Virus record (IMG/VR): IMGVR_UViG_3300014911_000516
Coordinates: 1-18,608 of that record
DNA length: 18,608 bases
Strand: one strand, 5' to 3'
The translations under genes were made by a program, and so were the position numbers. Shown piece by piece: positions 1,097 to 18,608 of the stretch. How positions within the stretch are numbered: the stretch's first letter is position 1; every line of letters starts with the position of its first letter. The notes under the pieces were generated by a model. The model did no database searches and had not been told where the DNA came from. It saw only the letters and a list, made by a program, of their open reading frames with translations.

Positions 1097-1423
1097 ATGA
1101 AAAAGACAGCTATAGCTTTAACAATATGGTTAACTAGTATATTCCTCTTAGTACTACTCCGCTCCTATTTCAAAGCGACAGCTCCCGTACTTTATCTCGA
1201 ATGGGAAAAACCCACCGTAAGAATTGAAGGAAAAGTAAAGCCCGTAACCGTAGAACTAATCGGAGATAAATTGTTAATCCTCCTCGATAATGGCGATATA
1301 ATTACAATACATATACCAAAAACACAGCTGCTATCCCGCGGTTATGACATTACTACTTGCGTACTGGTTGCAGATTGCTTGATCGGGTGGATAATTGTAC
1401 TACTACTCAGCGATATAGACTAA
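1097..1423 (+). CDS. Membrane protein, N- and C-terminal hydrophobic helices flanking a small beta-rich domain
   Basis: MKKTAIALTIWLTSIFLLVLL and CVLVADCLIGWIIVLLL; starts 6 nt after the exonuclease stop. Confidence 0.7.
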   Translation: MKKTAIALTIWLTSIFLLVLLRSYFKATAPVLYLEWEKPTVRIEGKVKPVTVELIGDKLLILLDNGDIITIHIPKTQLLSRGYDITTCVLVADCLIGWIIVLLLSDID

Positions 1424-1527
1424 CAAAACTGAAACAAAACCTCTTCATTATTTTTTCCTTCTTTCATCAATTGTTTTAATATCACCTAAAGGAAAGAAAT
1501 ATAGGTTTAAATTTAAAGAGATTAAAC

Positions 1528-2247
1528 GTGATAAGTATGATTCCAGTAGTAGATTATAGATTCGGCGATAAATACTACGTAACAGAATTCGTAAGGCCTT
1601 ACACATTTATGGTGAAAACAGTAGCAAAAACACTAAAAGGAAAGAACGATGTAGAAACGGTAATTAAGGTAGCCAGATTCATTCGAGATGAGTTTTACTA
1701 TCCACTTGATATCTTCAAAAATCCATCCTGCGATGCAATGTTCCTAAAGTCTCGTAAATTCTGTTATTCGTGGCACTTCAAGAAGTACGTTAATTACATG
1801 TGGCTATTTCCTTCTGAATGCTTACTAATGAAATTCGGAATCTGCATCGACACTTCACTATTGTGTACATCCATACTGAGAAGTTTAGGGCTCTTTTCCT
1901 ACGTAGGCCTAGGAGCTGTGTATTATAAAGATAGATTGTTAGGTTATCATGCATGGACCGAAGTGTACATTCCAAGTAAAGTAGATTGGTATATCATTGA
2001 GACTACAATACATGAAAAGAACGTTTCAAATATACTGAGGCGGGAGGAGGCTTACAAAGGATCTTACGATATACGATATGAAATTTTCGCACGGTTTAAC
2101 GAGAAAGAGTACGAGGAAGTAAAGCCAATTCTAACGTGGATACAATTTTATGGTAAGAAATGGAAAAAAGTGAGAGCTAAGGAGCGAAATAAACAAATAG
2201 TGATATGGAGTACATTTAAACAGATATCACCGTTAATAGGTGTTTAG
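1528..2247 (+). CDS. Transglutaminase-like (papain-fold) cysteine protease/transferase; start may be ATG 1537
   Basis: GICIDTSLLCTSILRSLG (catalytic Cys helix), YHAWTEV (His), WYIIETT (acidic third residue). Confidence 0.85.
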   Translation: MISMIPVVDYRFGDKYYVTEFVRPYTFMVKTVAKTLKGKNDVETVIKVARFIRDEFYYPLDIFKNPSCDAMFLKSRKFCYSWHFKKYVNYMWLFPSECLLMKFGICIDTSLLCTSILRSLGLFSYVGLGAVYYKDRLLGYHAWTEVYIPSKVDWYIIETTIHEKNVSNILRREEAYKGSYDIRYEIFARFNEKEYEEVKPILTWIQFYGKKWKKVRAKERNKQIVIWSTFKQISPLIGV

Positions 2248-2249
2248 AA

Positions 2250-2393
2250 GTGAAAGGGAGGGTAAAAGTCCTATTACTACGTTTCAGAACTACTGAAAGT
2301 AAAACGAAGTATCGAATACTTGTAGAATCCTTTAAAAAAATAAATAATACGAATAATGCAAGATTATTATTAGGGGAAAAGGATGATAAATAG
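2250..2393 (+). CDS. 47-aa basic hypothetical protein (MKGRVKVLLLRFRTTESKTKYRILVESFKKINNTNNARLLLGEKDDK)
   Basis: Not in the ORF track. GTG 2 nt after the upstream stop with AGGTG upstream; fills the intergenic gap and overlaps the start of the next gene. Confidence 0.45.
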   Translation: MKGRVKVLLLRFRTTESKTKYRILVESFKKINNTNNARLLLGEKDDK

Positions 2394-2763
2394 AGAAGAT
2401 GTAATATCCATTATCATAATTACTACCGCTTTTATACTGACATATAAAGGAATTCTAACTCCCGACCATTACCTTACGATTATCTCAGCCATATTAGCAT
2501 ACTATTTAGGTCAGACCATAAAGATGCATCAGGTTAATAAAGCACTAGCATATCGTGAAGGGATAACCAGATCATATCAGAGGATGATAAGGCGTTTTGG
2601 GGCATTCCTAATGATAAGCGGTATTACTCTGATAATTGAGAAATGGATAATCTCAGGAGCTACCTACACATTCCCACCGCATTTCCTTGATCATGGATTA
2701 ATTGGTTTAATACTGGAGATCATAGGATTCGTATTATTAATACGTAGAGAAAAGAAAAAGTAG
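2383..2763 (+). CDS. Four-TM membrane protein
   Basis: Two hydrophobic hairpins separated by a basic linker; basic C-terminus RREKKK. Confidence 0.75.
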   Translation: MINREDVISIIIITTAFILTYKGILTPDHYLTIISAILAYYLGQTIKMHQVNKALAYREGITRSYQRMIRRFGAFLMISGITLIIEKWIISGATYTFPPHFLDHGLIGLILEIIGFVLLIRREKKK

Positions 2764-3000
2764 GTGCTAGAAATGAATAAAAGGACAATAGCATACGTAA
2801 TTGCAATTATAATACATCTACTAATCGCTATGAAGGTATTTAGTATCATAACCTCTACGTTACAAATTGAGAATCCATACACTCTTGAAAATACATCTAA
2901 AATCGTATCAGCATTAGGAAGTGTAGCTGTATACCTTATAGTACTAGCAATCATAACAGGAGTAGCCTTAGCTTTTGCATTTCGTCTATTTCGCACGTAA
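2764..3000 (+). CDS. Small two-TM membrane protein (true start probably ATG 2773)
   Basis: IAYVIAIIIHLLIAM and VAVYLIVLAIITGVALAFAF; AGGTG lies upstream of ATG 2773. Confidence 0.7.
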   Translation: MLEMNKRTIAYVIAIIIHLLIAMKVFSIITSTLQIENPYTLENTSKIVSALGSVAVYLIVLAIITGVALAFAFRLFRT

Positions 3001-6221: not shown

Positions 6222-6680
6222 ATGCAGAAGAAAATTAAATGGACGACCATAAAAGTCCCGACAGAGGTAAGGAATATCGTTAAGAAATTAATGGAAGAAG
6301 AAAAGAAACCTGCATGGAAGATAATAGTTGAGTCAGTTTTATGGTATAACAGGATAAAACGTAGGCCTTATGAGAAAGCAGAGTTACCCGTGACTGAAAA
6401 GATATCATGGTATATAGCAAAATTATGCATGTCAGTAGGGGCATTCAAAGAAAATCCTACAAAAGAAAACTTAGAGCGTTTACAAAAAACATTAACACAG
6501 ATCAAAGAAAGGTTAAAGATTGATACGGATATTGTATACAGAACTGCAGTAGCTTATCAACGTAAACCTGAAACTGAAAACAGAATTGAATTAAACATGG
6601 CTACAAAATCGGTAGTTTTCGATATCATTTATACATATATCTACAAATACGAAATGAAAGAAATGACCACTAGCTCCTAA
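6222..6680 (+). CDS. Protein with N-terminal RHH-like domain and helical C-terminal domain
   Basis: WTTIKVPTEVRNIVKKLMEEEKKPAWKIIVESV is a strand-helix-helix pattern; GGTGA SD. Confidence 0.7.
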   Translation: MQKKIKWTTIKVPTEVRNIVKKLMEEEKKPAWKIIVESVLWYNRIKRRPYEKAELPVTEKISWYIAKLCMSVGAFKENPTKENLERLQKTLTQIKERLKIDTDIVYRTAVAYQRKPETENRIELNMATKSVVFDIIYTYIYKYEMKEMTTSS

Positions 6681-6730: not shown

Positions 6731-7462
6731 ATGTGTATGTCTATGTTGTCTCAAAGTCTTAAAATTGAAGAGGTAGACTACACCGAAGACTACGACTGGC
6801 TAATTATCCTCGATGCTTGTCGCTATGACTATTTTGTAAAGTTATGGAAAATAGGGAAAATCGAACCGCGATTATCGCTAGGATCATGCACCTTGGAAGT
6901 ATTATCTAAAATATCCAGAATACCTCATAGCGTATGCCTAACTGGGCATCCATTCGTATTGTCATTCAGAGAAAAATTCGATAAGGTGATAGATGCGGGA
7001 TTTGATTATACGCTAGGCACTTGTCCACCTTGGTATATGCTGACGGCGTTTAATCTTTTCTATAATAAAATGAAACCGTATAAACGGAAGATCCTATGGT
7101 TTCTGCAACCGCATCATCCTCTCTTATCTAATCCTACATTACTGATTAAAATATTCGAGGATGAGGAAGGGAAACGAATGACGCCACAGGAAAAGGTAAC
7201 GAAAGCCTATCAGGAAGCATATAGAAAAGGGATATTATCGAAGGCCTACCGAAGCAATCTAGCGTTAGTGCTTGATTATGTATCAGAGATAATAAAGAAA
7301 GTAGATGGAATTGTCGTGATTACATCCGATCATGGAGAAGGATTAGGAGAGCCATTACGCCCAGAGGATAAACCAGTATTCAGTCATCCATGTGGGCGTG
7401 AAGAGTGGGAGCTACGTTTAATTCCTTGGTGTGTTATAGATACTAGTGAATTATGGTGGTGA
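6731..7462 (+). CDS. Alkaline phosphatase/sulfatase-superfamily hydrolase or transferase
   Basis: LIILDACRYD, SLGSCT (Thr nucleophile position), QPHHP, VITSDHGE, SHP, IPW. Confidence 0.85.
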   Translation: MCMSMLSQSLKIEEVDYTEDYDWLIILDACRYDYFVKLWKIGKIEPRLSLGSCTLEVLSKISRIPHSVCLTGHPFVLSFREKFDKVIDAGFDYTLGTCPPWYMLTAFNLFYNKMKPYKRKILWFLQPHHPLLSNPTLLIKIFEDEEGKRMTPQEKVTKAYQEAYRKGILSKAYRSNLALVLDYVSEIIKKVDGIVVITSDHGEGLGEPLRPEDKPVFSHPCGREEWELRLIPWCVIDTSELWW

Positions 7463-8352
7463 ACGTGGGAGAGATATTAACATCCTATGATGGTTTTAAG
7501 TTTTATGTAGAAAAGGAATATCATAAAGATCCGTTACGTTATGATGAACGCACAGTTCTTACAGTACTTGTAATGTTAGGAAAAAGAGATCGTATATTCG
7601 TAGATGTAGGGGCAGGAGTAGGAAGATACACAGTAAGAATGTCAAAGTGGTATGAGCTCGTATATGCAATTGAGCCCTTACCAGAACATGTAAGAATCCT
7701 TAAGAAAAATCTAGAGCTAAATAATGTAGATAATGTCATAGTAATACCCTATGCAGCCTACGATAAAAGCACTACACTACCGATATACTTAGGAGGCTTG
7801 TCATCATCTACCGTTAGGAGACATGATATGAAAGACTATATTATAGTAAAAGCAGAAAGATTAGATAAGCTAGTACATAAAGCAGATGTTATAAAAATCG
7901 ATGTAGAGGGAGCTGAATTCGAGGTAGTTAAAGGAGCTGAAAAACTACTAAAGTCAGATAAACCATTCTTAGTAATAGAACATCACGATTTTAGACCCGA
8001 CTGGAAAGAGAAACTTAAGGGAACATTCCAGAAAGTCTTTAACTACCTATCTTCACTAGGTTATGTCCCACTATTTACTACATACGTACATCGATGCTGG
8101 ATACATAAAGATAGGCTAAATGATTTATCAGATGAAGCTTTACATTATCTTCTCTGGAGACATTGGGCTAACGTATGTTACTTTAACTTAAAGCTTGGAC
8201 GTGATTGGTACTATGGTTTACCTCTCACTTGGTGGTGGGGCTATGACTTTATAGAGTTTCTCGAAGAGTTACCTATACATATACTTGAGGAAAAAGAATG
8301 GAGCGATCCACAACATATATTAAGGATCTCAAAGGAAGTAATGGTGATATAA
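7453..8352 (+). CDS. FkbM-family SAM-dependent methyltransferase with a Trp-rich C-terminal extension
   Basis: FVDVGAGVG, YAIEP, RLD, IKIDVEGAEFEVVKGA, PFLVIEHH. Confidence 0.9.
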   Translation: MVVNVGEILTSYDGFKFYVEKEYHKDPLRYDERTVLTVLVMLGKRDRIFVDVGAGVGRYTVRMSKWYELVYAIEPLPEHVRILKKNLELNNVDNVIVIPYAAYDKSTTLPIYLGGLSSSTVRRHDMKDYIIVKAERLDKLVHKADVIKIDVEGAEFEVVKGAEKLLKSDKPFLVIEHHDFRPDWKEKLKGTFQKVFNYLSSLGYVPLFTTYVHRCWIHKDRLNDLSDEALHYLLWRHWANVCYFNLKLGRDWYYGLPLTWWWGYDFIEFLEELPIHILEEKEWSDPQHILRISKEVMVI

Positions 8353-9028: not shown

Positions 9029-9171
9029 CTCCTACCCACCTCCACTTTTTCCATCCACTCTGCTATTATCCTCAGCATTACATCTTGAACTTCCATGTTC
9101 ATCTCCTTCGCTACCTGCATCAGCCTCTGATATACTTTGTCTGGAAGTATTATTTCTATCTTTACTGCCAT
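9025..9171 (-). CDS. 48-aa RHH-like protein (MAVKIEIILPDKVYQRLMQVAKEMNMEVQDVMLRIIAEWMEKVEVGRR)
   Basis: Not in the ORF track. GAGGAG SD upstream, CopG-type pattern IEIILPDxxYxRLxxxAxxxxMxVxDVxxxII, and its TGA overlaps the ATG of 8675..9028. Confidence 0.8.
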   Translation of the reverse strand: MAVKIEIILPDKVYQRLMQVAKEMNMEVQDVMLRIIAEWMEKVEVGRR

Positions 9172-9529
9172 CCAAGATCTCCTCAATTAATATAACATCA
9201 TTTGATTTTAATATCTTTCTATCGATTTGCCTGAAGTGATGATATGCACCATCGTGATCGTATGCTGATCTGTATAACTGTTTTCTAAATCTTTCTGCTA
9301 GGTGCTTATCGATCGCAGTAACTGAAAATTCAATAGTTATTCTATATCCTGTAGGTAGTGGATTTATAGATGATGATACTGTAGTGTGAATTCCAGATCT
9401 GATTAATTGTCTAGCAACATAGTAAGCATAGGATACGATAGAAGTCATTCGCTTCTGGATGAGTGCTTGTAACAACTTTATCATTCTCAGATCTGGAAAC
9501 TCTACATCTTGATGAATGTGGATAGGCAT
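9032..9529 (-). CDS. Hypothetical alpha/beta protein; last ~46 codons overlap the 48-aa RHH gene
   Basis: GAGGGG SD; divergent from the MCP operon. Confidence 0.75.
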   Translation of the reverse strand: MPIHIHQDVEFPDLRMIKLLQALIQKRMTSIVSYAYYVARQLIRSGIHTTVSSSINPLPTGYRITIEFSVTAIDKHLAERFRKQLYRSAYDHDGAYHHFRQIDRKILKSNDVILIEEILDGSKDRNNTSRQSISEADAGSEGDEHGSSRCNAEDNSRVDGKSGGG

Positions 9530-9684
9530 CTTCTACCCCCTCATATTTAGTTAGAGTTTACATCACATTATAATAGACTGTTATAGGAGTATATATACAC
9601 TATTCAATATTTTTTTGTATTAATATTTTTACACCATTTCTTAAAACTTGATTTCTTTCTTTCGTTACTCGAGGCGATGGGGAT

Positions 9685-10056
9685 ATGCCTGGTGTTAAAG
9701 ACTTAAGAGAGCGAGTAGATAAGTACATAGCTAAGACACCAGCCGATCAAACTGGTACAAGATACGGGGCTGTTAAGGACTTGGCTGTAGGAAGGTTTAC
9801 AGCGTATGCTTCAAGCATAGTAGAATTCAGAGAACTAGTAAGGAATGTACTAAATAAAGAAGGCGTTCCAGCCGGACAACAGGGAGTTTACTTTGCATTT
9901 GCTATGAGGCTTCGTAGTAAGGCCTTCAGCCACTCTGGTACTACTCTCAAGGATTACGTGAATGGTATGATACAGGACTTCACCACAGGTAAGGGAGCTG
10001 ATCCCACCATACTGAAGAAAATAGCATCCATGATATTAGGAGAGGTGATAAGCTAA
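9685..10056 (+). CDS. Major capsid protein 1, SIRV2 fold
   Basis: VRNVLNKEGVPAGQQGVYFAFA..SGTTL..NG..ADPTILKKI aligns with recalled SIRV2 P134 (VSAVLTQYGITGPNRAIYQGFG..SGPAL..NG..ANPQVLDAV); basic N-terminal helix. Confidence 0.9.
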   Translation: MPGVKDLRERVDKYIAKTPADQTGTRYGAVKDLAVGRFTAYASSIVEFRELVRNVLNKEGVPAGQQGVYFAFAMRLRSKAFSHSGTTLKDYVNGMIQDFTTGKGADPTILKKIASMILGEVIS

Positions 10057-10072
10057 AGGAGGTGAGTGAGAG

Positions 10073-10447
10073 ATGCCCGGAGTTAAAAGATTTGGTGATA
10101 TGAGAGAGAAATACGAGCTAAAATACGATGGTGCAAACGTAACTGCTAGGTTAACGGCCGTAGAGGAGATAAAGAACAGAAGGTATGAAGCATTCTCTTC
10201 ACCAATCGTCAACATAATCGAAACTGTTAGGACGATACTCGAGAGTAATGGCGTCCCAGCTGGTCAGCATGGTATCTACTATGCCTTTGCTGAAGTGATT
10301 CAAAAATACACCTTCAGCCACTCTGGTGCTACCTTAGACTTACTAATATCTGGAAAGAAGAGTGAATGGGTAACTGCCCACAAGGCCGATCCAGCAATCC
10401 TCGACAAGATTGTATTAGCTATAATAGGAGCATTACCACCTTATTAG
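10073..10447 (+). CDS. Major capsid protein 2, SIRV2 fold
   Basis: Gapless paralog of MCP1 (49/123 identities, hand count); SGATLDLLISGKKSEWVTAHKADPAILDKIV matches the rudiviral MCP C-terminus; GGAGGTGA SD. Confidence 0.92.
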   Translation: MPGVKRFGDMREKYELKYDGANVTARLTAVEEIKNRRYEAFSSPIVNIIETVRTILESNGVPAGQHGIYYAFAEVIQKYTFSHSGATLDLLISGKKSEWVTAHKADPAILDKIVLAIIGALPPY

Positions 10448-10499
10448 AGTCCTTAGCTTCACAATATACAGTACTGTAAGCGTACTTAATCACATTCAC

Positions 10500-10531
10500 T
10501 TTTTTTACTTTTTTCTTTTCTTTCTTTTTTT
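10500..10531 (+). terminator. Long oligo(T) terminator of the MCP operon
   Basis: About 30 nt of almost pure T, ~50 nt after the MCP2 stop. Confidence 0.7.
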
Positions 10532-10581
10532 ACACGTAACATATTCTAGTAGGGAGAACTTCTTTTCACTAGGGAGAATAT

Positions 10582-11628
10582 ATGAGTACTGTAATTGTTA
10601 CATCTCATCGATCTACATCTTTGCAAAAAGTGAGTAATGACATTAAAACGGCATTAGAGAGTAATGGAAGAGAAGTAAAGAATATTCTAGGATTTCCAAG
10701 TGTAAGAAGTTCTGATTATGCAAATTGCAGAAACGTGCTCTTCGTAATGACGTTCGATACTATCTGGGCTAGGCCTTACTTCTGTGCTTACTACTTACTA
10801 AAATCAGATGGATGGAACACAATATTCTACACTACTATCGAGGGAAAACCACTAAGATTCCTAGGAGATGAATGGATATATCGTGAATGTGAGTTCATAG
10901 CTAATTCGAATTATACTAAAAAGAAAATCGCTAAAGAAGGTGGTAGGGTTTTAGACGTAATTCATCATGGAATAGATACCCGTAAATACAGGAATTTAAA
11001 GTTTATGGGTAGAATAATGCGAAGTGAACTAGGTGCTTCAGAAAAGGAATTCATCGTTCTTTATATTGCTGGGGGGTATCGAAGAAAAGGACATGATTTA
11101 TTCAGATCTGTCATCCAGTACGTAGGAAAGAAGGATAATACAATTAAATTTGTAGTAGTGACACAGCCTAATGCAATTCAATATTATGCAGATCTAGAGA
11201 ATTGCATTGTTTCAGATGAATTTGGAAATTTACCAGAAGAAAAGATAATAGGATTATTCCATGCATGTGATCTCTATGCTCAGCCCTCTCTAAGCGAGGG
11301 ATTTGGATTACCAGTCTTGGAAGCACTAGCTTGTGGAAAGGTAGTAGTACATCCAGATTATGAGCCTCTCTCAGAGATAACTACAAAGTCTACAAGCTAT
11401 CGATGTAAGGTAGCTACTGTTTCAGAATGGAGTGGTGAGCGAGAAGAACATACTGGAATCATATATGAATTACACCTTTACGATCCAAATGAGTTTGGTG
11501 ATCTCATCATACAAGCTAAAGATGAATTAATGAAAGAGAGAAAAGAAAAGGAGAGATTATGTCTAAATCGTGCTAAACAATTCGATATGCATAAAACATA
11601 TAAGAAGTTCTTAAAGTATATCCAGTAG
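10582..11628 (+). CDS. GT4 (GT-B fold) glycosyltransferase, like SIRV ORF335
   Basis: RKG, PSLSEGFGLPVLEA (EX7E), FYTTxxGxP, NS, HGI, EFG; directly follows the MCP as in rudiviruses. Confidence 0.93.
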   Translation: MSTVIVTSHRSTSLQKVSNDIKTALESNGREVKNILGFPSVRSSDYANCRNVLFVMTFDTIWARPYFCAYYLLKSDGWNTIFYTTIEGKPLRFLGDEWIYRECEFIANSNYTKKKIAKEGGRVLDVIHHGIDTRKYRNLKFMGRIMRSELGASEKEFIVLYIAGGYRRKGHDLFRSVIQYVGKKDNTIKFVVVTQPNAIQYYADLENCIVSDEFGNLPEEKIIGLFHACDLYAQPSLSEGFGLPVLEALACGKVVVHPDYEPLSEITTKSTSYRCKVATVSEWSGEREEHTGIIYELHLYDPNEFGDLIIQAKDELMKERKEKERLCLNRAKQFDMHKTYKKFLKYIQ

Positions 11629-11640
11629 GAGGTAGGTATT

Positions 11641-12045
11641 ATGGATGAGACTATACAAAAAGAAGAGAAAAAGGAAACTACTACTCCTTCCACCACCCCC
11701 CAAAATGTAACACAGCCTACGCCACCAGCCACACCTACATCAATCTATAGAAAACCCGAATATCAACTTCAGCCACCTACACAGCTTACACCACCTACTC
11801 CTCCACAGCCTGTTAGGAGAGAACTTACGGAAGAAGAGAAAGCATTCTTAGATGCATTAGGATCTGTAGTTTCTTCGGCACAGGAACTATCATACGTACT
11901 GGCCTCAATTGATCCCGATTTGCTTCAGAAATATTCTGATCTACGGGAATTGTTCGAGAGCGCTAGGAATGTTGTACGCTCTGTATATCGATTTCATAAA
12001 CTAATTAAGGAGAGATCCAGGGGGAGTACCAGGGGGAGTAGCTGA
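11641..12045 (+). CDS. Protein with P/T/Q-rich disordered N-terminus and helical hairpin C-terminus
   Basis: GGAGGT SD; low-complexity residues ~13-57. Confidence 0.8.
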   Translation: MDETIQKEEKKETTTPSTTPQNVTQPTPPATPTSIYRKPEYQLQPPTQLTPPTPPQPVRRELTEEEKAFLDALGSVVSSAQELSYVLASIDPDLLQKYSDLRELFESARNVVRSVYRFHKLIKERSRGSTRGSS

Positions 12046-12320
12046 TGGAAAATAGGGTAGTTATTTACATAACTCCATATACTTTTTATTATAAAGGATG
12101 TAAGGTAACCATTTGGGGAGCTAAACGTTTTGATCTCCCTACTGGTGAGAGAAGTTATCTTCTCTCACTTGAAGTAGAATGGAGAGGGTATAGATCTAGA
12201 CAATTTATACTAGAGGTTTCTGATAACCAAGACTTCAAGAACAAACTTGATCTGGAAATCGCTAGGATGAAGTTAGCAATTCTTACGGGAAATCTTTCTC
12301 CCTTTGTGAAAGTGCGTTAG
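12045..12320 (+). CDS. Hypothetical beta-sheet plus helix protein
   Basis: TGATG overlap with the upstream gene; GGGGAG SD. Confidence 0.75.
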   Translation: MENRVVIYITPYTFYYKGCKVTIWGAKRFDLPTGERSYLLSLEVEWRGYRSRQFILEVSDNQDFKNKLDLEIARMKLAILTGNLSPFVKVR

Positions 12321-12360
12321 GCGAATATAATATATATCGGTTTTATACTATATCAAATAG

Positions 12361-15300
12361 GTGAATATGGATTATCGGGAGAAATTAGAGTTTGAGAATG
12401 TAGATATAGCAGATGTAGAATACTTAATGAAAATGCTTTCAGTAGTTAGTGATAACTCTCTTGACTACCCTATTATGGATGAGATTGATATTACAAAACT
12501 GGATCTAGACGCTCTAGTAGTGTCGGAGTTTGGTATTACGGATATCATAGGACAAATATCCTCATGGTTATATGAAAAGCTTCAAGCATTCTCATCGTGG
12601 ATAACATCAGGAATTGAAACGATAGTTAACGCATTATGGGAGAACTTCATAAAACCAGCTATTAACGTTATAGATGCTGGTGTAGGATGGATTAAAGATC
12701 AGGTATATTCAATATGGGATAGACTACAGAATATTGGTGATATATTAAGTTCCATAGGAGGTACTATAGTTGATATCTTCAATACAGTAAAGGAAGGATT
12801 CATAAATCTAATAAAGGAAATACCATCTGCTGTAGGAAGATTCATAAATAGTGTGAAGGATCTTATAATATCAAAGATTGAAGCGATTCCAGATCTAATC
12901 ATTAATGGAGTGCGATCGTTTATTGATGCTATTTCTTCGGGGATTGACTTTTTGAAGGAAGGATTGCAGAATGTTACAAACTTCCTAGGAAACATAGGAA
13001 TGGCACTATCCAACATATTCTCATCGATAAAAGAAGGTTTTAGTGTACTTAAGGGATATATTGAAGGAGCATTAGCAACATTCAGTAGTAAGATTGCTGG
13101 TGCTATTGATACTGTAAGAACAGCATTTATGGAATCTATGCAAACTGTAGCTACATGGATACAACAGGCATCAGGAGCGATACAAGGCTTCGTAAATGGA
13201 ATATTAAAACTTCCAGAATGGTTTAGGGAGCATTTAGTAGCACCATTAACTGAGGCTATGTCGAAATTCGCCTCATGGATATGGGAGCATCTACCAGAGG
13301 GTATAAGGTCATTCTTTGAGAAGGTAAGAGATGCTATAATAGGATTTTATGAAGGATTTAAGTCATTTATTGCTGATCCTAAGGGATGGTTTATCAGAAA
13401 TGTATGGGAGCCTCTGAAAGAGCGATTAAGGGATATTGGAGAATGGATTTGGGAAAGACTTCCTGAAGGAGTAAAAACATTCTTCGAAAGAGCGAAGGAA
13501 TTCTTTACAGTTGATTTGGTAAACTTCTTTACCAAAACATTACCTGAAAAGATACGCGATCTAGTGGACACTATTAAAACAATTCCTGAAAAGATTAAAG
13601 AGATTCCAGATAAAATAAAGGAGATGGCCGATAATGTAGCAAATCTTCCTGAAATGATAAAGAGTGCTTTTGAAAAGATAGGTGAATGGATTTGGGAAAA
13701 ATTACCAGAAAATATACGTAATTTCATAGATAAAGCTAGAGACTTCATCACAGATGTCTATGATCAGTTTAAGGAGTTCATCAAAGATCCAAAGGGAAAG
13801 TTTTACGATGTACTGAAAGGCGTAGGTGAAAAGATATTAGCAGGTTTGGGTTGGATTTGGGATAAAGTCTTGGATATAGTAACATTCATTAAAGCTAAAG
13901 TAATCGAGGCCTGTAAGACAATATCAACATGGATCTATAGTATTGCAAAAACAATAAGTGAGACGTTTAAGAAGATGTTTATTGAAACATTTATAGTTCC
14001 AATCAAAAACGTAAAATCTACATTCGTAGAACTACTTAAAACAGCTTTTGACGAGGCATTCGCACAAGAGGAAGGCGGTGAATTATGGTTATTATCATCA
14101 TTAATCCCAGAGATCTATAACGTAATGTATCCTATAATAATTATTCCAGTACTCGCTAAAGGCGTGGCTGAAGCTACGGGAGAGCAAGAAGTTTCGGGTA
14201 AGATAGCCGGTCTTGGTGGGGCGATTAAAGTTAAGCTAGGTAAACTGATTGGCGAAGTAGCTGATACGTTAAAAGACTTGGTTTCAAGGACTATAGATGA
14301 GATTGCATTAGGACTTTCATTTAATCTATTCGAGCCTTTACGGTACGCTGTAAGGCCTTTATCGAAACGTCTACTTACACCTATATTTATGAAACAATAC
14401 GGTATAGATGCCTTCTTTGAGGTGCCTTCGTTTAGTGAACTTAGGAAGTTGCTACAAAGGTACTATCCAACTACTAAGGATGAAAAGGAAGATTTTGAAA
14501 AAATGCGGAAATACTTTAGGACAATGCTAGAAATAAGAGGATTACCACAGTCATATATAAATGAAGTAATGAAGACGCTCGAGGAATGGTCTATTGAAAT
14601 CGAAGATCGCTTTACCGAATATACCAAAGTAAAGCGTAAAATCCCGCTTTCGCCACTTTACGAAATGCCTTCGATATCTGAAGTATGTACATTTATGGTA
14701 CGTGATATAATTAAAAAGCCTGAAGATTTCATAAAATGGTTAAATAAGCTTGGCGTCAGTCGTGATATAGCACTATTCAATTATCTATTACACTATCGCT
14801 ATCCTTCTCCTGAGAAAATAGCCGATTTCGTATGGCGAGGTATAGCAGGAGTATTATGGAATCCTGATGCGTCCATGGATACCGAGGTAATGAGCGCTTT
14901 CGAACTTAAGCCTGAAAAGATGAAAGCAGTTGCTCCCAGACAACTCAATTTCGAAGGAAAGACATTATTCGAGATGCTTAAACATTATATGAAGTGGCAT
15001 GATTATGCAAGATTTCCTTGGGCGGCCGGTTGGCCTACCGATAACGCTATCATCACAGATCTCCTAGCTGACATACCCGGCAAAATCGATTTGAGATGGA
15101 TGACCCGATGGGGTATATTCGAATATTGGAGTGCTAAGAAAATTGGATTAGAAACTTCTTTAGAAGAGATTATGCAAAAGTTGCTTCCACCACAAGGTGA
15201 GACTAAAGCCGATGATGTAATACAGTATTTGTATAAACAGCTTACAGAGCCTACTCCACTCTTCGATATCCGGCAATTCTGTAGGACATTACAGGCTACA

Positions 15301-16689
15301 GGATTGCATCCATACTGGATTCCTTGGGTAGGAATTGCAGAATCGATAAATGCTCTTACAGAAGAGAGGACGTTACTAAGAACTGGATTTATGAATCTCT
15401 TTGAAAAAGGCCTATTCAGTTTGAATACATTAAATCAACTATTGGCAGGATTCTTCACAATTAAATTTAAGGTAGGATATTATGACGTGAAGGATTATAA
15501 ATGGAAGTATTCAGATGTAGAAGTACCAGTTGCGTTCCTACCAGCAGAGAGCAAATTACTTGAGCTACGATCGATATTTGATAGGATGTTAGAATTATAC
15601 GCAGAGATATATTCTGAGATCAGGAAATCAATACGTTATGGAATATATGATGTAAAAAGCGCTAAGAAGATATTGCAGAAGATGATCACAGATCTAGCTA
15701 CTTATGGTAGTGGGTTAATAAAAAGCGTTACTGGAAGAAAGTTAACTCCAGAAATCGATGCGGGATACATAGATATATGGACAAACATTGAATCACAAAT
15801 ACAGGATATCGAAAAGAAGATAGCAATACGTAGTGTAGCACAAGGTGTATTAGGGTGGTTATTATACAGGTTAGCTTATGGGTGGGTAACTGAGGAAGAT
15901 TTCAGATCTGTAGTAAACATACTTACAAGCAAATTCTACGTATACAAAGAGTTAGGAGATGCCGTAGTAGAACTAGGTAAGAAGTTAGCCGAAATAATGA
16001 GGAAGCAAGAGCGTGAAGTTTATGTACCTACGCCTTCACAGATTGCGACATTTTCAGAATACATGGATATTCCTGATAATGTGATTAAGGAAGCTTTCAA
16101 GGAGAGGAATATTGTAGAGCCTTGGGCCTCATTCTGGTATAAATACATAACTACTAGAGCTATATCCAGCGAGACCAATACATTAGTGTCTACATTTAGG
16201 AGAATCGTAGAATACTTCGCCGTTCCTAAGGACTTAGTAGATAGTGTAAAGGATCTAATGGTTAAAGGTGGCTGGACCTCCAAAGAAATGCCTATATTCG
16301 ATCTAGATCTCCAGTTACGTAGATTCTACAGGATAATGAGGACGTTTGTGCCTACCATACGTGGTTTCGTAACTGATGCGATGTATATGGATGATTGGGA
16401 GAGCAAGTTGCAAGATTGGCTCACGATACGAGGAATTGACCCAAAGAAATACGAGAAACAGGTGAACTACTATAAGCACTTGATAAAAGCTAGGAAGGCG
16501 TATCGTAGATTCAGCTGGTATCTGACTAGGCTACTAAACGCTTACTGTGCTGGAGTAATTAATGAAACACAAGTAAGACAAAAATTACAAAGATTCAAAC
16601 CTTATGGATTGTCAGATGAAGAGATTGAAATAATAATTGATGGATTCAGAATGGAGAAAGCATATCGTGAAGCAATATATGGATCTTAA
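12361..16689 (+). CDS. Large minor virion/terminal-fibre protein, like SIRV2 ORF1070
   Basis: Long amphipathic helical N-terminal region, then EQEVSGKIAGLGGAIKVKLGKL (recalled ORF1070 EVEIDLAPVGLGGKIPIKFGEI), EP, PSF and RGLP; repeated P[ST] helix-start motifs. Start uncertain (GTG 12361 or ATG 12367). Confidence 0.8.
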   Translation: MNMDYREKLEFENVDIADVEYLMKMLSVVSDNSLDYPIMDEIDITKLDLDALVVSEFGITDIIGQISSWLYEKLQAFSSWITSGIETIVNALWENFIKPAINVIDAGVGWIKDQVYSIWDRLQNIGDILSSIGGTIVDIFNTVKEGFINLIKEIPSAVGRFINSVKDLIISKIEAIPDLIINGVRSFIDAISSGIDFLKEGLQNVTNFLGNIGMALSNIFSSIKEGFSVLKGYIEGALATFSSKIAGAIDTVRTAFMESMQTVATWIQQASGAIQGFVNGILKLPEWFREHLVAPLTEAMSKFASWIWEHLPEGIRSFFEKVRDAIIGFYEGFKSFIADPKGWFIRNVWEPLKERLRDIGEWIWERLPEGVKTFFERAKEFFTVDLVNFFTKTLPEKIRDLVDTIKTIPEKIKEIPDKIKEMADNVANLPEMIKSAFEKIGEWIWEKLPENIRNFIDKARDFITDVYDQFKEFIKDPKGKFYDVLKGVGEKILAGLGWIWDKVLDIVTFIKAKVIEACKTISTWIYSIAKTISETFKKMFIETFIVPIKNVKSTFVELLKTAFDEAFAQEEGGELWLLSSLIPEIYNVMYPIIIIPVLAKGVAEATGEQEVSGKIAGLGGAIKVKLGKLIGEVADTLKDLVSRTIDEIALGLSFNLFEPLRYAVRPLSKRLLTPIFMKQYGIDAFFEVPSFSELRKLLQRYYPTTKDEKEDFEKMRKYFRTMLEIRGLPQSYINEVMKTLEEWSIEIEDRFTEYTKVKRKIPLSPLYEMPSISEVCTFMVRDIIKKPEDFIKWLNKLGVSRDIALFNYLLHYRYPSPEKIADFVWRGIAGVLWNPDASMDTEVMSAFELKPEKMKAVAPRQLNFEGKTLFEMLKHYMKWHDYARFPWAAGWPTDNAIITDLLADIPGKIDLRWMTRWGIFEYWSAKKIGLETSLEEIMQKLLPPQGETKADDVIQYLYKQLTEPTPLFDIRQFCRTLQATGLHPYWIPWVGIAESINALTEERTLLRTGFMNLFEKGLFSLNTLNQLLAGFFTIKFKVGYYDVKDYKWKYSDVEVPVAFLPAESKLLELRSIFDRMLELYAEIYSEIRKSIRYGIYDVKSAKKILQKMITDLATYGSGLIKSVTGRKLTPEIDAGYIDIWTNIESQIQDIEKKIAIRSVAQGVLGWLLYRLAYGWVTEEDFRSVVNILTSKFYVYKELGDAVVELGKKLAEIMRKQEREVYVPTPSQIATFSEYMDIPDNVIKEAFKERNIVEPWASFWYKYITTRAISSETNTLVSTFRRIVEYFAVPKDLVDSVKDLMVKGGWTSKEMPIFDLDLQLRRFYRIMRTFVPTIRGFVTDAMYMDDWESKLQDWLTIRGIDPKKYEKQVNYYKHLIKARKAYRRFSWYLTRLLNAYCAGVINETQVRQKLQRFKPYGLSDEEIEIIIDGFRMEKAYREAIYGS

Positions 16690-16714
16690 TAGTATAATTT
16701 ATTGAGGTGATTAG

Positions 16715-16921
16715 ATGTCTACTAGAAGAAGAAGGGGAAGAGTAAGTAAAACGGAAAGTAAATCGAAAGATCCGTTAGAAGAGGCAATAAAGAAGATTGA
16801 CGCAGATCTAACCAAAGCGATTGATGATCTTAAGAAGGCTGTTGAAAGCCTCCAGAAGATTACTTCGGGGCTTTCAAGTCCTACTAGGACTTCTACTAGA
16901 AGGAGTACTAGGGGGAGGTGA
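16715..16921 (+). CDS. 68-aa basic coiled-coil protein with R/S/T-rich tails
   Basis: GAGGTGA SD; MSTRRRRGR, central heptads, TRTSTRRSTRGR. Confidence 0.8.
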   Translation: MSTRRRRGRVSKTESKSKDPLEEAIKKIDADLTKAIDDLKKAVESLQKITSGLSSPTRTSTRRSTRGR

Positions 16922-16924
16922 TAA

Positions 16925-18271
16925 ATGGTGGGGATGGCACAGAGGGAGGCTCAAAAGCTTCTGGAAGCTAAGCGTAAGTATTTCGAAAAGGCACTTTCAG
17001 ATACGGCCATAGGTATCAACTTCCTTAAATCACTACGAAATATCGATGAGACAAGATTTAGATCAGATATAACGTTATCAGATACACTTTTTTCATCTCT
17101 AATGTCTGTGTATTTTTATGGAATACCATTAAGTGAGACTACACCATGGATTCAAACATTTACACCTGTGCTTCCTGATTTTGAAGAATTGTTACGTGGA
17201 ATTCTAGTTAAGTTTGAAAAATTCGATATTACAATACCGTTTCCTGAATTAACCGACGTAGATGAAACATTACGATTCTTCTTGATAGATGAGGTGGCTA
17301 ACAATATAATCGCTACACGAGGTAAACCGCTAATCGTGGGAGTAACCAAATATGGTGAGGGTTACGTAGATCCTGAAGCTGTTAGGGAGTTCCTACGTTC
17401 TACACTATATGCTTATGCAAAGAAAGACATCTCCCTAACTGAGTTAAGGAATAGGCTTGATAAAGTAGGTAAGACACTAAATATACATCCTTCGTTAATC
17501 GAGGATGCCTTCAATAGGATGATGCTTATAGAAACAATTAAGAAAAAGGCTGCTACTTGGGATTATGCTTGGTGGGACGTAAGTGAATGGGCCGAAGAGG
17601 AAGAAGGTGTAGGAAAAGTTGAGTTCGAAACATACTCTGGAGAAAAGGTTAAGGTAGAGTACGATAATATGCTTGAAGCAGAAGCTGGTGGTTATTGGGA
17701 TTTATCATATTGGGATAATGCATACTGGATAGGAGATGAAGGGTCACAAAAATATCCATATAAATATGATGAGAAAGAACTTAAATCGAATATCGATAAA
17801 GTAAGAGATACAATACTTACAAACTTTATAAGGTGTTATATCTACACAGGTTTAGGTGTAGGAAACTATCAGAGAGCATGGGAGAGGAGAAAGTATTACA
17901 GATCGTCACGAACTGAAACTTATGCTCTACCATTCTCCCATCGGCTTAGGATTGAATCGCTAGTTAGGAACTACGTGCTCTCTAAAGAGCCTGACTGTCC
18001 TCCTTGGAAATTACGATTATACATGTCAGCCATGCTTGAAATCTATGGAAGATTATTTGGAACGCATCGATGGGGTACTGAAATGGAAGTATCGATGAGT
18101 GGAGAGGAGTTCAAGAAATACTGGCTAGATAAGTGGAGTGCTGAAGGCCTAGAGCGTTCAATTCTGGAAGGAATGTATGAGTCGTTTAAAGATGTCATAT
18201 CTGCTTTGGGAACTATTAGACAAATTTCGTATTTGAGATTTATAAGATGGAAATACAGGAGGTATGAATAA
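16925..18271 (+). CDS. Minor virion protein, like SIRV2 ORF488
   Basis: SSRTETYA, SAMLEI and MSGEEFKKYWLDKWSAEGL match recalled ORF488 SSEIENYA, SAIVEI and LSYSDFLNYWKTKWKFYGL; GGAGGTGA SD. Confidence 0.78.
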   Translation: MVGMAQREAQKLLEAKRKYFEKALSDTAIGINFLKSLRNIDETRFRSDITLSDTLFSSLMSVYFYGIPLSETTPWIQTFTPVLPDFEELLRGILVKFEKFDITIPFPELTDVDETLRFFLIDEVANNIIATRGKPLIVGVTKYGEGYVDPEAVREFLRSTLYAYAKKDISLTELRNRLDKVGKTLNIHPSLIEDAFNRMMLIETIKKKAATWDYAWWDVSEWAEEEEGVGKVEFETYSGEKVKVEYDNMLEAEAGGYWDLSYWDNAYWIGDEGSQKYPYKYDEKELKSNIDKVRDTILTNFIRCYIYTGLGVGNYQRAWERRKYYRSSRTETYALPFSHRLRIESLVRNYVLSKEPDCPPWKLRLYMSAMLEIYGRLFGTHRWGTEMEVSMSGEEFKKYWLDKWSAEGLERSILEGMYESFKDVISALGTIRQISYLRFIRWKYRRYE

Positions 18272-18272
18272 T

Positions 18273-18608
18273 ATGGTGTTTGAACATTTAAGGCCTAAGC
18301 CGAAAACGAGAATTTCCATATTGTGGGGTAATCAGTTAGTTGATGCTTTAGAATTATTGTATGGAATGACTGAGAGGAGGCTAACCTTAGCAAATCTTCG
18401 ATCAATTTCTAGCGACTTACTACCTGCTATTAACAAATATTATAATTTAGGTATATTAGGAAGAGAATGGAACGTTATTGCGGGAAATTATGGGTATTTC
18501 CAGAGTAATGTTTTCGTACAAGGAAAACCAGTCATTAAAGATGGAGACCCTATCACCGTAGCAGATCTAGGGACTGAGGCATACAATAAGCTAAGAACAC
18601 TTACTGAA
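18273..18608 (+). CDS. N-terminal 112 codons of a minor virion protein, like SIRV2 ORF564 (runs off the window)
   Basis: Hand-translated MVFEHLRPKPKTRISILWGNQLVDALELLYG...GNYGYFQSNVFVQGKPVIKDGDPITV, compared with recalled ORF564 GYFQNDVYVSGQPVLTEEDPIYI; GGAGGT SD 9 nt upstream. Confidence 0.78.
   Translation, partial: MVFEHLRPKPKTRISILWGNQLVDALELLYGMTERRLTLANLRSISSDLLPAINKYYNLGILGREWNVIAGNYGYFQSNVFVQGKPVIKDGDPITVADLGTEAYNKLRTLTE

What the first reader, a model, noticed from the sequence alone, without database searches (positions are those of the whole stretch)
9685..18608. Rudivirus-like virion module with two capsid genes: candidate undescribed Adnaviria lineage
Seen: MCP1-MCP2-GT4-two small genes-1442 aa-68 aa-448 aa-partial ORF, all on one strand. 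Established: SIRV-type rudiviruses have one MCP (homodimer, rigid non-enveloped rod, A-form DNA) plus three minor proteins, while two-MCP heterodimers typify Lipothrixviridae, Ungulaviridae and Tristromaviridae. Inference: this virus combines the rudivirus minor-protein and GT set with a heterodimeric capsid. Its E/K/R-rich proteins and strong SD use suggest a thermophilic host outside Sulfolobales. It might instead belong to a recently described metagenomic family such as Chiyouviridae; I cannot exclude that.
Basis: partly seen in the sequence, partly recalled or inferred. Interest (0 to 1): 0.85.

Follow-up and report, generated by a model that had tools for sequence, protein, structure and literature searches.

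The report
Rod-shaped archaeal virus, twin capsid genes
This is about half the genome of an uncultivated rod-shaped archaeal virus from Guaymas Basin hot sediment; it belongs to an apparently unnamed group related to rudiviruses that always keeps two side-by-side capsid genes, which is a useful addition to a fast-growing catalogue and not a new kind of virus.

Summary
All nine ORFs lie where stated on the + strand; the cut-off last ORF starts at 18273. Both small proteins are SIRV2-fold capsid proteins. They are followed by the core rudiviral GT4 glycosyltransferase and by homologues of rudiviral P1070 (terminal fibre) and P488.

The window is the whole of IMG/VR contig IMGVR_UViG_3300014911_000516, cut inside a gene at both ends. 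Relatives reach 35-41 kb.

At least 18 distinct metagenomic viruses share the MCP1-MCP2-GT order. Their MCPs form one clade (97/98 support), separate from Rudiviridae and from a single-MCP group that includes the proposed 'Demeterviridae'. The duplication arose once inside this clade. Both copies are full length, always retained and under purifying selection.

A two-subunit capsomer is therefore plausible but not shown.

MRV1, Chiyouvirus, PBV300 and Caldarchaeales viruses already pair two MCP genes with rudivirus-like virion genes.

No P564 homologue was found. Chiyouvirus, PBV300 and 'Gaiaviridae' sequences could not be fetched for direct comparison.

Verdict: new member of a known kind, moderate interest.

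The parts
6222..6680 (+). 152-aa protein of unknown function, conserved across the tandem-MCP clade and the single-MCP sister group
   Evidence: tblastn gives 30-39% identity in most related loci. The local PSI-BLAST family has 15 members. No Pfam hit.
7453..8352 (+). FkbM-type SAM methyltransferase, a context gene upstream of the capsid genes
   Evidence: PF05050 at 8.7e-24. 45% identical in L003, and 33-42% in the Demeterviridae-like loci L040 and L042. Chiyouvirus also has an FkbM methyltransferase upstream of its MCP (supplement of PMC10848311).
8675..9028 (-). 117-aa clade-conserved protein, transcribed divergently from the capsid genes
   Evidence: 16-member family in related loci; not MCP-like by hhalign; no Pfam hit.
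9032..9529 (-). 165-aa clade-conserved protein, transcribed divergently from the capsid genes
   Evidence: 16-member family in related loci; not MCP-like by hhalign; no Pfam hit.
9570..9684 (+). AT-rich upstream region of MCP1 with a TATATATA stretch and a GAGG Shine-Dalgarno core; putative promoter and 5' leader (inferred)
   Evidence: Read directly from the sequence. The bacterial-type promoter scan is uninformative.
9685..10056 (+). MCP1, a SIRV2-fold major capsid protein paralog (123 aa); the more derived copy, which has lost the C-terminal tyrosine
   Evidence: PF12193 at 37.8 bits. An MCP1-only profile hits 6wq0 at 2e-12 and 3j9x at 4.4e-10. 41% identical to MCP2. dN/dS 0.04 against L028. 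Forms its own orthologue subclade (97/97).
10057..10072 (+). 16-nt spacer between MCP1 and MCP2 carrying the strong Shine-Dalgarno AGGAGGTGA
   Evidence: Read directly from the sequence.
10073..10447 (+). MCP2, a SIRV2-fold major capsid protein paralog (124 aa); the more conservative copy, which keeps the C-terminal ...PPY
   Evidence: PF12193 at 45.2 bits. AF2 model with pLDDT 83.5. Foldseek top hits are 3j9x and 6wq0, and the C-terminal bundle fits 3f2e at rmsd 1.2 A. dN/dS 0.096 against L028.
10490..10532 (+). Oligo-T-rich tract right after MCP2; putative archaeal transcription terminator or attenuator (inferred)
   Evidence: Read directly from the sequence; also reported by TRF and as repeat D1/D4.
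10582..11628 (+). GT4-family glycosyltransferase, homologue of the core rudiviral GT (SIRV2 ORF335)
   Evidence: PF00534 at 2.3e-17 and phrog_2170 at 7.5e-36. Full-length tblastn hits at 24-28% identity in 46 records, nearly all Rudiviridae.
11641..12045 (+). 134-aa clade-specific protein with a Thr/Pro/Gln-rich N-terminal half and a helical C-terminal half; function unknown
   Evidence: 14-member family. No match to SIRV2 ORF110 or ORF84c. Sequence shown.
12045..12320 (+). 91-aa clade-specific protein; function unknown
   Evidence: 16-member family. No match to SIRV2 ORF110 or ORF84c.
12361..16689 (+). 1442-aa homologue of rudiviral P1070 (terminal-fibre / host-recognition minor structural protein) with an extra, repetitive helical N-terminal region of about 460 residues
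   Evidence: hhalign of clade profile against rudivirus profile: 99.7% probability, E 6e-27, residues 462-1435 against 61-1070. BLASTP to SMRV1 orf17 matches at the N-region and the extreme C-terminus. Best PHROG hit phrog_7334. Length varies from 1442 to about 2270 aa among relatives.
16715..16921 (+). 68-aa protein with Arg-rich termini and a central helix; a gene of similar size sits at this position in relatives
   Evidence: Sequence. Relatives have 67-76 aa genes here. No BLAST-level homology.
16925..18271 (+). 448-aa homologue of rudiviral minor structural protein P488 (SIRV2 ORF488, SMRV1 orf20, MRV1 ORF19)
   Evidence: hhalign: 95.2% probability, E 2.5e-8, 285 columns. Reciprocal PSI-BLAST. 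AF2 model poor overall (pLDDT 60) but with a confident C-terminal helical bundle. MCP-like domain inconclusive.
18273..18608 (+). 5' part (112 codons) of a gene that is 530-563 aa in relatives; its N-terminal domain is shared with SIRV2 ORF269 and MRV1 ORF13-314; cut by the contig end
   Evidence: Translation. BLASTP to syntenic genes in L008, L017, L013, L011 and L024, and to SIRV2 ORF269 (8e-5). Reciprocal PSI-BLAST. No Pfam hit.

Best explanation
The region is the virion-morphogenesis module of an uncultivated rod-shaped archaeal virus of the realm Adnaviria (class Tokiviricetes, Ligamenvirales-like).

Shown:
- Two adjacent SIRV2-fold capsid genes, the core rudiviral GT4 glycosyltransferase, a P1070-type terminal-fibre protein and a P488-type minor structural protein are encoded on one strand.
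- The same order is kept in at least 18 related metagenomic viruses.
- The two capsid genes come from a single duplication at the base of this clade. That event is independent of the MRV1 duplication and of the MCP1/MCP2 pair of the enveloped filamentous viruses.
- Both copies are full length and keep the basic N-terminal arm. Both are retained in every clade member and are under purifying selection.

Inferred:
- The two genes form one highly expressed bicistronic unit: a promoter-like AT-rich region, a 16-nt spacer with a strong SD, and an oligo-T tract after MCP2.
- Both products are made in similar amounts and co-assemble, most likely as a heterodimeric capsomer that wraps linear dsDNA into an A-form helical rod as in SIRV2/SSRV1.
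- The GT glycosylates virion proteins.
- The P1070 and P488 homologues build the terminal structures used for host recognition.
- The host is probably a hyperthermophilic member of Thermoprotei, not Sulfolobales.
For: Fold and family:
- PF12193 above the gathering score for both proteins.
- Family profile against PDB: 6wq0 at 1.5e-17 and 3j9x at 4.5e-16 over full length. MCP1-only profile: 2e-12 and 4.4e-10.
- MCP2 AF2 model has pLDDT 83.5, with top Foldseek hits 3j9x and 6wq0.

Other module genes:
- GT homologous to all rudiviral core GTs.
- P1070 and P488 homology by profile-profile comparison.

Conservation and phylogeny:
- Synteny in the relatives.
- MCP tree: the tandem clade has 97/98 support, with mirrored MCP1-type and MCP2-type subtrees.

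Both copies functional:
- dN/dS of 0.04-0.27 in both paralogs.
- 27 conserved sites are shared, including K13, K17, R26, K31 and R37 in the N-arm. MRV1's non-canonical paralog lacks that arm.

Expression signals.

Host and habitat.
Against: No virion proteomics or structure exists for this clade.

[quoted passage not shown] The authors of bioRxiv 10.1101/2025.08.23.671958 suggest that only one of two adjacent copies next to the GT may be structural.

Only four sites are fixed differently between the two paralog lineages, so they could be partly redundant.

Multimer modelling could not be run.

The host inference rests on MAG binning and composition, not on CRISPR spacers. One related contig is binned in a Thermotogae MAG and one in a Methanotrichaceae MAG.

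The contig is a fragment, so linearity, terminal repeats and the rest of the gene set are unknown.
Confidence: 0.6

Rival explanations
1. Only one of the two capsid paralogs builds the virion, as a rudivirus-type homodimer. The other has a non-structural or accessory role, for example DNA binding during replication, chaperoning assembly or acting as a decoy, as is proposed for the second paralog of Hoswirudivirus.
For: PMC10848311 states that the second rudiviral MCP paralog is not incorporated into virions. bioRxiv 10.1101/2025.08.23.671958 raises the same possibility for adjacent MCP copies next to a GT. MCP2 is the more conservative copy: it has the higher Pfam score, keeps the C-terminal Tyr seen in outgroups, and sits on the shorter stem. 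MCP1 could therefore be the accessory one.
Against: MRV1 ORF09 lacks the N-terminal arm of about 43 residues. MCP1 here is full length and keeps the conserved basic arm residues. MCP1 is under purifying selection at least as strong as MCP2 (omega 0.04 against 0.096). It is kept in all 18 clade members. The two genes look co-transcribed with strong ribosome-binding sites.
Confidence: 0.3
2. The contig belongs to an already named or proposed family (Chiyouviridae, Ahmunviridae or 'Gaiaviridae') and is therefore not an undescribed lineage.
For: Shared features with Chiyouvirus: an FkbM methyltransferase upstream of the MCP, MCP followed by GT, and P488-like and P1070-like proteins. The Caldarchaeales preprint reports rod-shaped viruses with two adjacent MCP copies next to a GT. 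The sequences of Chiyouvirus, PBV300 and 'Gaiaviridae' could not be fetched, so there was no direct comparison.
Against: Published Chiyouvirus layout: one canonical 125-aa MCP, then GT, P488-like, Acr and the fibre protein, plus a distant 250-aa MCP-like gene. That differs from this window. The Chiyouvirus MCP is 36.8% identical to the SIRV1 coat protein, against 22-25% for the window's MCPs. The 'Demeterviridae' representative L041 has that same Chiyouvirus-like layout, is only 28-30% identical in MCP, and falls in a different clade. Two MCP-profile scans of IMG/VR retrieved other contigs from the same samples but none of the Chiyouvirus or 'Gaiaviridae' contigs. None of the clade's IMG/VR ids occur in the stored tables of the preprint or in any paper text.
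Confidence: 0.15
3. Both paralogs are structural but do not form a heterodimer. Each makes homodimers used in different parts of the rod (body versus ends) or under different conditions.
For: The paralogs are 41% identical, with 27 shared conserved sites and only 4 lineage-specific fixed differences. Their dimer interfaces may therefore still be compatible with self-association.
Against: There is no precedent among solved adnaviral virions, which are homodimeric or heterodimeric throughout (PMC12282232). The tight bicistronic arrangement suggests equal dosage.
Confidence: 0.08

Closest known systems
Metallosphaera rod-shaped virus 1 (Rudiviridae, Hoswirudivirus; NC_074633)
   Same: Two adjacent PF12193 genes followed closely by the core GT, plus P1070-, P488- and ORF269/ORF13-type proteins and Hjc.
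   Different: MRV1's extra copy (ORF09, 108 aa) lacks the N-terminal DNA-wrapping arm and sits on a very long branch, whereas both window copies are full length. The duplications are independent. MCP identity to the window is only about 22-25%. MRV1 has a P564 homologue, which was not found in this clade. Its host is Sulfolobales.
SIRV2 / SSRV1 (Rudiviridae; PDB 3j9x, 6wq0)
   Same: Best sequence-profile and structural matches for both capsid proteins over full length. Shared GT, P1070, P488 and Hjc.
   Different: A single MCP forming a homodimer. MCP identity is 21-26% and GT identity 24-28%. The methyltransferase family and the gene order differ. Acidophilic Sulfolobales hosts.
Chiyouviridae (Wargodvirus xiongnu, PP467602; Bathyarchaeia, hot spring)
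   Same: A metagenomic Ligamenvirales-type virus with an FkbM methyltransferase, MCP followed by GT4, P488-like and terminal-fibre proteins, and two genes annotated as MCP (PMC10848311).
   Different: Its two MCP genes are not adjacent. One is a 250-aa MCP-like protein, and the P488-like gene precedes the fibre gene. It also carries Cas2 and mini-CRISPR arrays, which are not seen in the window. No direct sequence comparison was possible.
'Demeterviridae' vOTU_0037 (IMGVR_UViG_3300005573_000154; proposed in bioRxiv 10.1101/2025.08.23.671958)
   Same: A rod-shaped virus with a SIRV2-like MCP and P488-like and P1070-like proteins. Relatives L040 and L042 share the FkbM methyltransferase and carry extra MCP-like ORFs.
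   Different: A single canonical 125-aa MCP only 28-30% identical to the window's, placed in a different MCP clade. Its host is assigned to Caldarchaeales by CRISPR spacers in that preprint.
Lipothrixviridae / Ungulaviridae / Tristromaviridae MCP1-MCP2 heterodimers (e.g. AFV1, PDB 5w7g)
   Same: Two paralogous capsid proteins of the same fold, usually adjacent, proposed here to form one capsomer.
   Different: The window's pair is a young, lineage-specific duplication (41% identity). The family profile matches the AFV1 proteins far more weakly (5.7e-7 and 1.3e-4) than the rudiviral MCPs. The virion module has no predicted membrane proteins, and the rest of the module is rudivirus-like.

Membership tests
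Adnaviria / Tokiviricetes | Major capsid protein with the SIRV2-type alpha-helical fold | tested here: met
   PF12193 above the gathering score for both proteins. Profiles hit 6wq0 and 3j9x. The AF2 model's top Foldseek hits are 3j9x and 6wq0, and 3f2e fits at rmsd 1.2 A.
Adnaviria / Tokiviricetes | Linear dsDNA genome with inverted terminal repeats | tested here: inconclusive
   The contig is cut within genes at both ends and has no terminal inverted repeat. The 35.5 kb relative's contig ends also show no ITR. No longer contig of the same virus was found.
Adnaviria / Tokiviricetes | Filamentous virion with A-form DNA wrapped by MCP dimers | not testable with these tools
   Needs electron microscopy or cryo-EM of virions.
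Rudiviridae | Single MCP forming a homodimeric capsomer (PMC12282232) | tested here: not met
   Two full-length MCP genes, both conserved and under purifying selection. Capsomer composition itself was not tested.
Rudiviridae | MCP falls inside the rudiviral clade | tested here: not met
   Rudiviral MCPs form a separate clade (100/99), and the window's MCPs lie in a distinct clade (97/98). Identity is 21-26%.
Rudiviridae | Conserved virion gene set: GT (ORF335), P1070, P488, P564 | tested here: inconclusive
   GT, P1070 and P488 homologues are present. No P564 homologue was found in the window or in the loci held for relatives, but the window is truncated.
Rudiviridae | Hosts in Sulfolobales | not testable with these tools
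   Only indirect evidence is available: a marine hydrothermal sediment sample, and relatives binned in Thermofilaceae, Desulfurococcales and Thermoprotei MAGs.
Chiyouviridae | Genome layout and gene content of Chiyouvirus: one canonical MCP, GT, P488-like, fibre protein, a separate 250-aa MCP-like gene, Cas2 and mini-CRISPR arrays | tested here: not met
   Compared with the published annotation table. The window has tandem MCPs, its fibre gene precedes the P488-like gene, and it shows no Cas2 or arrays. The window is partial.
Chiyouviridae | Genome-wide protein similarity to PP467602 | not tested
   The record is not in the phage collection, and the contig was not retrieved from IMG/VR.
'Demeterviridae' (proposed) | MCP clade and gene sharing with vOTU_0037 | tested here: not met
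   The L041 MCP is 28-30% identical and falls in a different clade. Only the P488-like, P1070-like and RHH genes are shared, at 27-40%.
Lipothrixviridae / Ungulaviridae / Tristromaviridae | Orthology of the two MCPs to the ancient MCP1/MCP2 pair; enveloped virion | tested here: not met
   The paralogs are each other's closest relatives (41% identity), and the duplication node lies inside the clade. Matches to the AFV1 MCPs are weaker. The envelope is not testable; the virion module has no TM segments.
Ahmunviridae / 'Gaiaviridae' | Sequence relatedness to PBV300 or to IMGVR_UViG_3300020567_000363 | not tested
   The sequences were not obtainable. These contigs were not retrieved by two MCP-profile scans that did find other contigs of the same samples.

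The most novel reading that the evidence does not exclude
A rudivirus-like lineage infecting neutrophilic hyperthermophilic Thermoprotei (Thermofilaceae or Desulfurococcales) evolved a two-subunit (heterodimeric) capsomer on its own, by a recent tandem duplication of a rudivirus-type MCP. That would make it a second, convergent origin of heterodimeric capsids in Adnaviria and a natural intermediate between homodimeric naked rods and heterodimeric filaments. The clade would merit its own family.
Probability: 0.4. Interest if true: 0.6.

Novelty: new member of a known kind. Interest (0 to 1): 0.45.

Why it matters
Adnaviria are known mostly from a few cultured viruses of acidophilic Sulfolobales. 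Each new lineage widens the picture of their hosts and capsid evolution.

This contig belongs to a sizeable clade that is unnamed in the literature I could search. It has at least 18 viruses, spans 35-59% GC, and occurs in marine vents and terrestrial hot springs. The MCP gene was duplicated once in this clade and both full-length copies have been kept ever since.

If both are virion subunits, the clade gives a young and tractable example of how a homodimeric capsomer becomes heterodimeric. That is a step inferred for the older enveloped filamentous viruses but no longer visible in them.

The finding also flags that many 'Thermofilaceae' and 'Desulfurococcales' MAGs in GenBank contain 35-41 kb contigs of these viruses. 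That is a host lead and also a curation issue.

It does not reveal a new kind of virus or a new mechanism.

Tried and rejected
Close matches:
- Megablast of the whole window against deposited phage and archaeal-virus genomes found nothing.
- tblastn of the 448-aa protein against that collection found nothing.
- The 1442-aa tblastn and PHROG hits to bacterial tape-measure proteins cover only the repetitive helical N-region. I judged them compositional and rejected a tape-measure function.

Small and flanking genes:
- The 134-aa and 91-aa proteins are not homologues of SIRV2 ORF110 or ORF84c.
- The 165-aa and 117-aa minus-strand genes are not MCP-like, unlike the extra MCP-like ORFs in L040 and L042.
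- No P564 homologue was found. The truncated last ORF relates to SIRV2 ORF269, not to P564.

448-aa protein:
- Its AF2 model was too poor overall (pLDDT 60), and Foldseek gave no match.
- A published MCP-like domain in this family got only weak support here (E 0.004, probability 9%).

Genome features: ITR search, tRNA search, Rfam and tandem-repeat or mini-CRISPR search were all negative.

Reference sequences I could not get:
- Fetching Chiyouvirus failed by accession, by MCP-profile scans and by using a 'Demeterviridae' MCP as bait.
- The metagenome scan found no longer contig of the same virus.

My own error: I first used the wrong frame (18274) for the last ORF. That gave a false 'no homologues' result and an error, corrected.

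Weak comparison: the composition figures for reference loci include unfiltered ORFs, so I use only the window's own value.

Full report
**What is there**

On the + strand lie 9685-10056 (123 aa), 10073-10447 (124 aa), 10582-11628 (348 aa), 11641-12045 (134 aa), 12045-12320 (91 aa), 12361-16689 (1442 aa), 16715-16921 (68 aa) and 16925-18271 (448 aa). A truncated ORF follows, starting at 18273.

The window is the whole of IMG/VR contig IMGVR_UViG_3300014911_000516, also known as Ga0180301_10001477. According to the sample table of bioRxiv 10.1101/2025.08.23.671958, the sample is Guaymas Basin subseafloor sediment, Guay16.

The contig is cut inside a gene at both ends: a C-terminal ORF fragment ends at position 80. 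It has no terminal inverted repeat, tRNA, Rfam match or repeat array. Relatives have 35-41 kb contigs, so this is roughly half a genome.

**The capsid genes**

- Both small proteins pass Pfam's gathering score for PF12193.
- A profile of the family matches the cryo-EM capsid proteins of SSRV1 (6wq0, 1.5e-17) and SIRV2 (3j9x, 4.5e-16) over nearly full length. It matches the AFV1 pair much more weakly.
- A profile made only of MCP1 orthologues gives 2e-12 and 4.4e-10 against the same two structures.
- The AF2 model of MCP2 is confident (pLDDT 83.5). Its best structural matches are 3j9x and 6wq0, and the C-terminal bundle fits 3f2e at 1.2 A.

**The rest of the module**

- The 348-aa protein is a full-length homologue (24-28% identity) of the core GT of every cultured rudivirus.
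- Profile-profile comparison of clade-only against rudivirus-only alignments shows that the 1442-aa protein is a P1070 homologue (99.7%, E 6e-27, residues 462-1435 against 61-1070). It has an extra repetitive N-terminal region of about 460 residues.
- The same comparison shows that the 448-aa protein is a P488 homologue (95.2%, E 2.5e-8).
- The truncated last ORF is syntenic in relatives, where it is 530-563 aa. It shares an N-terminal domain with SIRV2 ORF269 and MRV1 ORF13.
- No P564 homologue was found.
- The 134-, 91- and 68-aa proteins remain clade-specific unknowns.
- Upstream context genes are an Hjc resolvase, an FkbM methyltransferase, RHH regulators, an RNase H-like nuclease, a transglutaminase-like protein and a cluster of small membrane proteins.

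**Relatives and phylogeny**

Protein and contig searches found dozens of metagenomic relatives and no named virus. At least 18 distinct viruses carry MCP1-MCP2-GT in the same order, with separate orthologue groups for each paralog.

In a 48-sequence MCP tree:
- rudiviral MCPs form one clade (100/99);
- a single-canonical-MCP group, which includes L041, forms a second (83/86);
- the tandem clade forms a third (97/98, long stem), and inside it the MCP1-type and MCP2-type subtrees mirror each other.

L041 is vOTU_0037 of the proposed 'Demeterviridae'.

The duplication therefore happened once, at the base of this clade. It is independent of MRV1's and of the ancient MCP1/MCP2 pair of the enveloped filamentous viruses.

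The closest relative with a long contig (L003) shares 72-73% MCP identity. It shares only about 45-56% identity in the other common genes, and most of the window's left half is not shared.

**Are both copies functional?**

- They are 41% identical.
- Both are under purifying selection: omega is 0.04 and 0.096 against the closest relative, and 0.035-0.27 in other pairs.
- Both are full length and share 27 conserved positions, including the basic residues of the N-terminal arm. MRV1's extra paralog ORF09 lacks that arm entirely.
- Four positions are fixed differently. Three lie in the arm, and the fourth is the C-terminal Tyr, which MCP1 has lost.
- The genes are 16 nt apart with a strong AGGAGGTGA before MCP2. 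An AT-rich region lies upstream of MCP1, and a long oligo-T tract lies after MCP2.

I infer a co-expressed pair that co-assembles. This is not shown, and the literature offers the opposite reading for adjacent MCP copies in rudivirus-like viruses (PMC10848311; bioRxiv 10.1101/2025.08.23.671958).

**Comparison with the known**

The ICTV profile lists six Adnaviria families, with one MCP in Rudiviridae and two in the others (PMC12282232). However:
- MRV1, a classified rudivirus, has two adjacent PF12193 genes next to its GT.
- Chiyouvirus and PBV300 combine two MCP genes with rudiviral minor proteins.
- Caldarchaeales viruses and an Asgard hot-spring virus do likewise.

The combination itself is therefore not new.

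The published Chiyouvirus layout differs from this window, and 'Demeterviridae' is excluded by direct comparison. Chiyouvirus, PBV300 and 'Gaiaviridae' sequences could not be obtained.

**Host**

- The proteome composition is hyperthermophile-like (IVYWREL fraction 0.467), and SD-like cores precede 8 of the 9 module genes.
- High-GC relatives are repeatedly binned in Thermofilaceae or Thermofilum MAGs, and sometimes in Thermosphaera or Desulfurococcaceae MAGs.
- GTDB representatives carrying relatives are labelled Desulfurococcales and Thermoprotei. The Thermoprotei MAG comes from the same Guay16 sample as the window.

This supports a host in Thermoprotei outside Sulfolobales, but only indirectly.

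**Verdict**

This is a real and correctly read virion module of an uncultivated rod-shaped archaeal virus. It belongs to an apparently unnamed clade defined by a conserved tandem pair of full-length capsid genes. It is a new member of a known kind, with moderate interest (0.45). The heterodimer idea is plausible and testable but unproven.

Noticed in passing
window 9652-9671 and 10517-10536: A similar T-rich motif (TTTCTTTCTTTCGTTACTCG and TTTCTTTCTTTTTTTACACG) lies shortly upstream of both the MCP1 and the GT start codons (repeat D4). It may be a shared promoter or leader element of the late genes.
   Followed up: no
window 1097-3000: A cluster of three small predicted membrane proteins: 108 aa with 2 TM-like segments, 126 aa with 3, and 78 aa with 2. 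It is not shared with relatives at BLAST level. It could relate to egress or to an envelope.
   Followed up: partly
window 365-1090 and 1528-2247: An RNase H-like (PF13482) protein and a transglutaminase-like (DUF553 / Transglut_core) protein. The latter is 53% identical in L003. Neither is a typical rudiviral core gene.
   Followed up: no
window 12361-13740 (N-terminal ~460 residues of the 1442-aa protein): This N-terminal helical region aligns repeatedly with itself and with the N-terminus of SMRV1 orf17. It varies greatly in length among relatives, whose proteins span 1442 to about 2270 aa. It attracts spurious tape-measure hits.
   Followed up: partly
window 16715-16921 and 11641-12045: The 68-aa protein has Arg-rich ends (RRRRGR... 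and ...RRSTRGR) around a central helix. The 134-aa protein has a Thr/Pro/Gln-rich N-terminal half that looks like a disordered or glycosylated linker.
   Followed up: no
L003, L007-L010, L034-L036 and the clusters of P0009 and P0036: Contigs of 35-41 kb from these viruses sit in many GenBank MAGs labelled Thermofilaceae, Thermofilum, Thermosphaera, Desulfurococcales and Thermoprotei. One sits in a Thermotogae MAG and one in a Methanotrichaceae MAG. This is a host lead for some and probable misbinning for others.
   Followed up: partly
all related loci: Clade members range from 35% to 59% GC while keeping 50-73% identical capsid proteins. This suggests spread across hosts of very different base composition.
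   Followed up: no
L040 6620-7204 (-) and L042 8229-8741 (-): The 'Demeterviridae'-like contigs carry an additional longer MCP-like ORF (194 and 170 aa) on the opposite strand just upstream of the canonical 125-aa MCP. This is a different way of having several MCP genes.
   Followed up: partly
L092 1-3000 and L091 1-3000 (both ends of JAVYKL010000016.1, 35,497 bp): The longest relative's contig shows no inverted terminal repeat, and a gene runs off its left end. Even the 35 kb contigs may therefore lack the true termini.
   Followed up: yes
L095 (Ga0180298_1005934) and L096 (Ga0180301_10082762): Two short contigs, one from a sister Guaymas sample and one from the same sample, encode P488-like proteins 90% and 82% identical to the window's. 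Several closely related strains or species therefore co-occur there.
   Followed up: no
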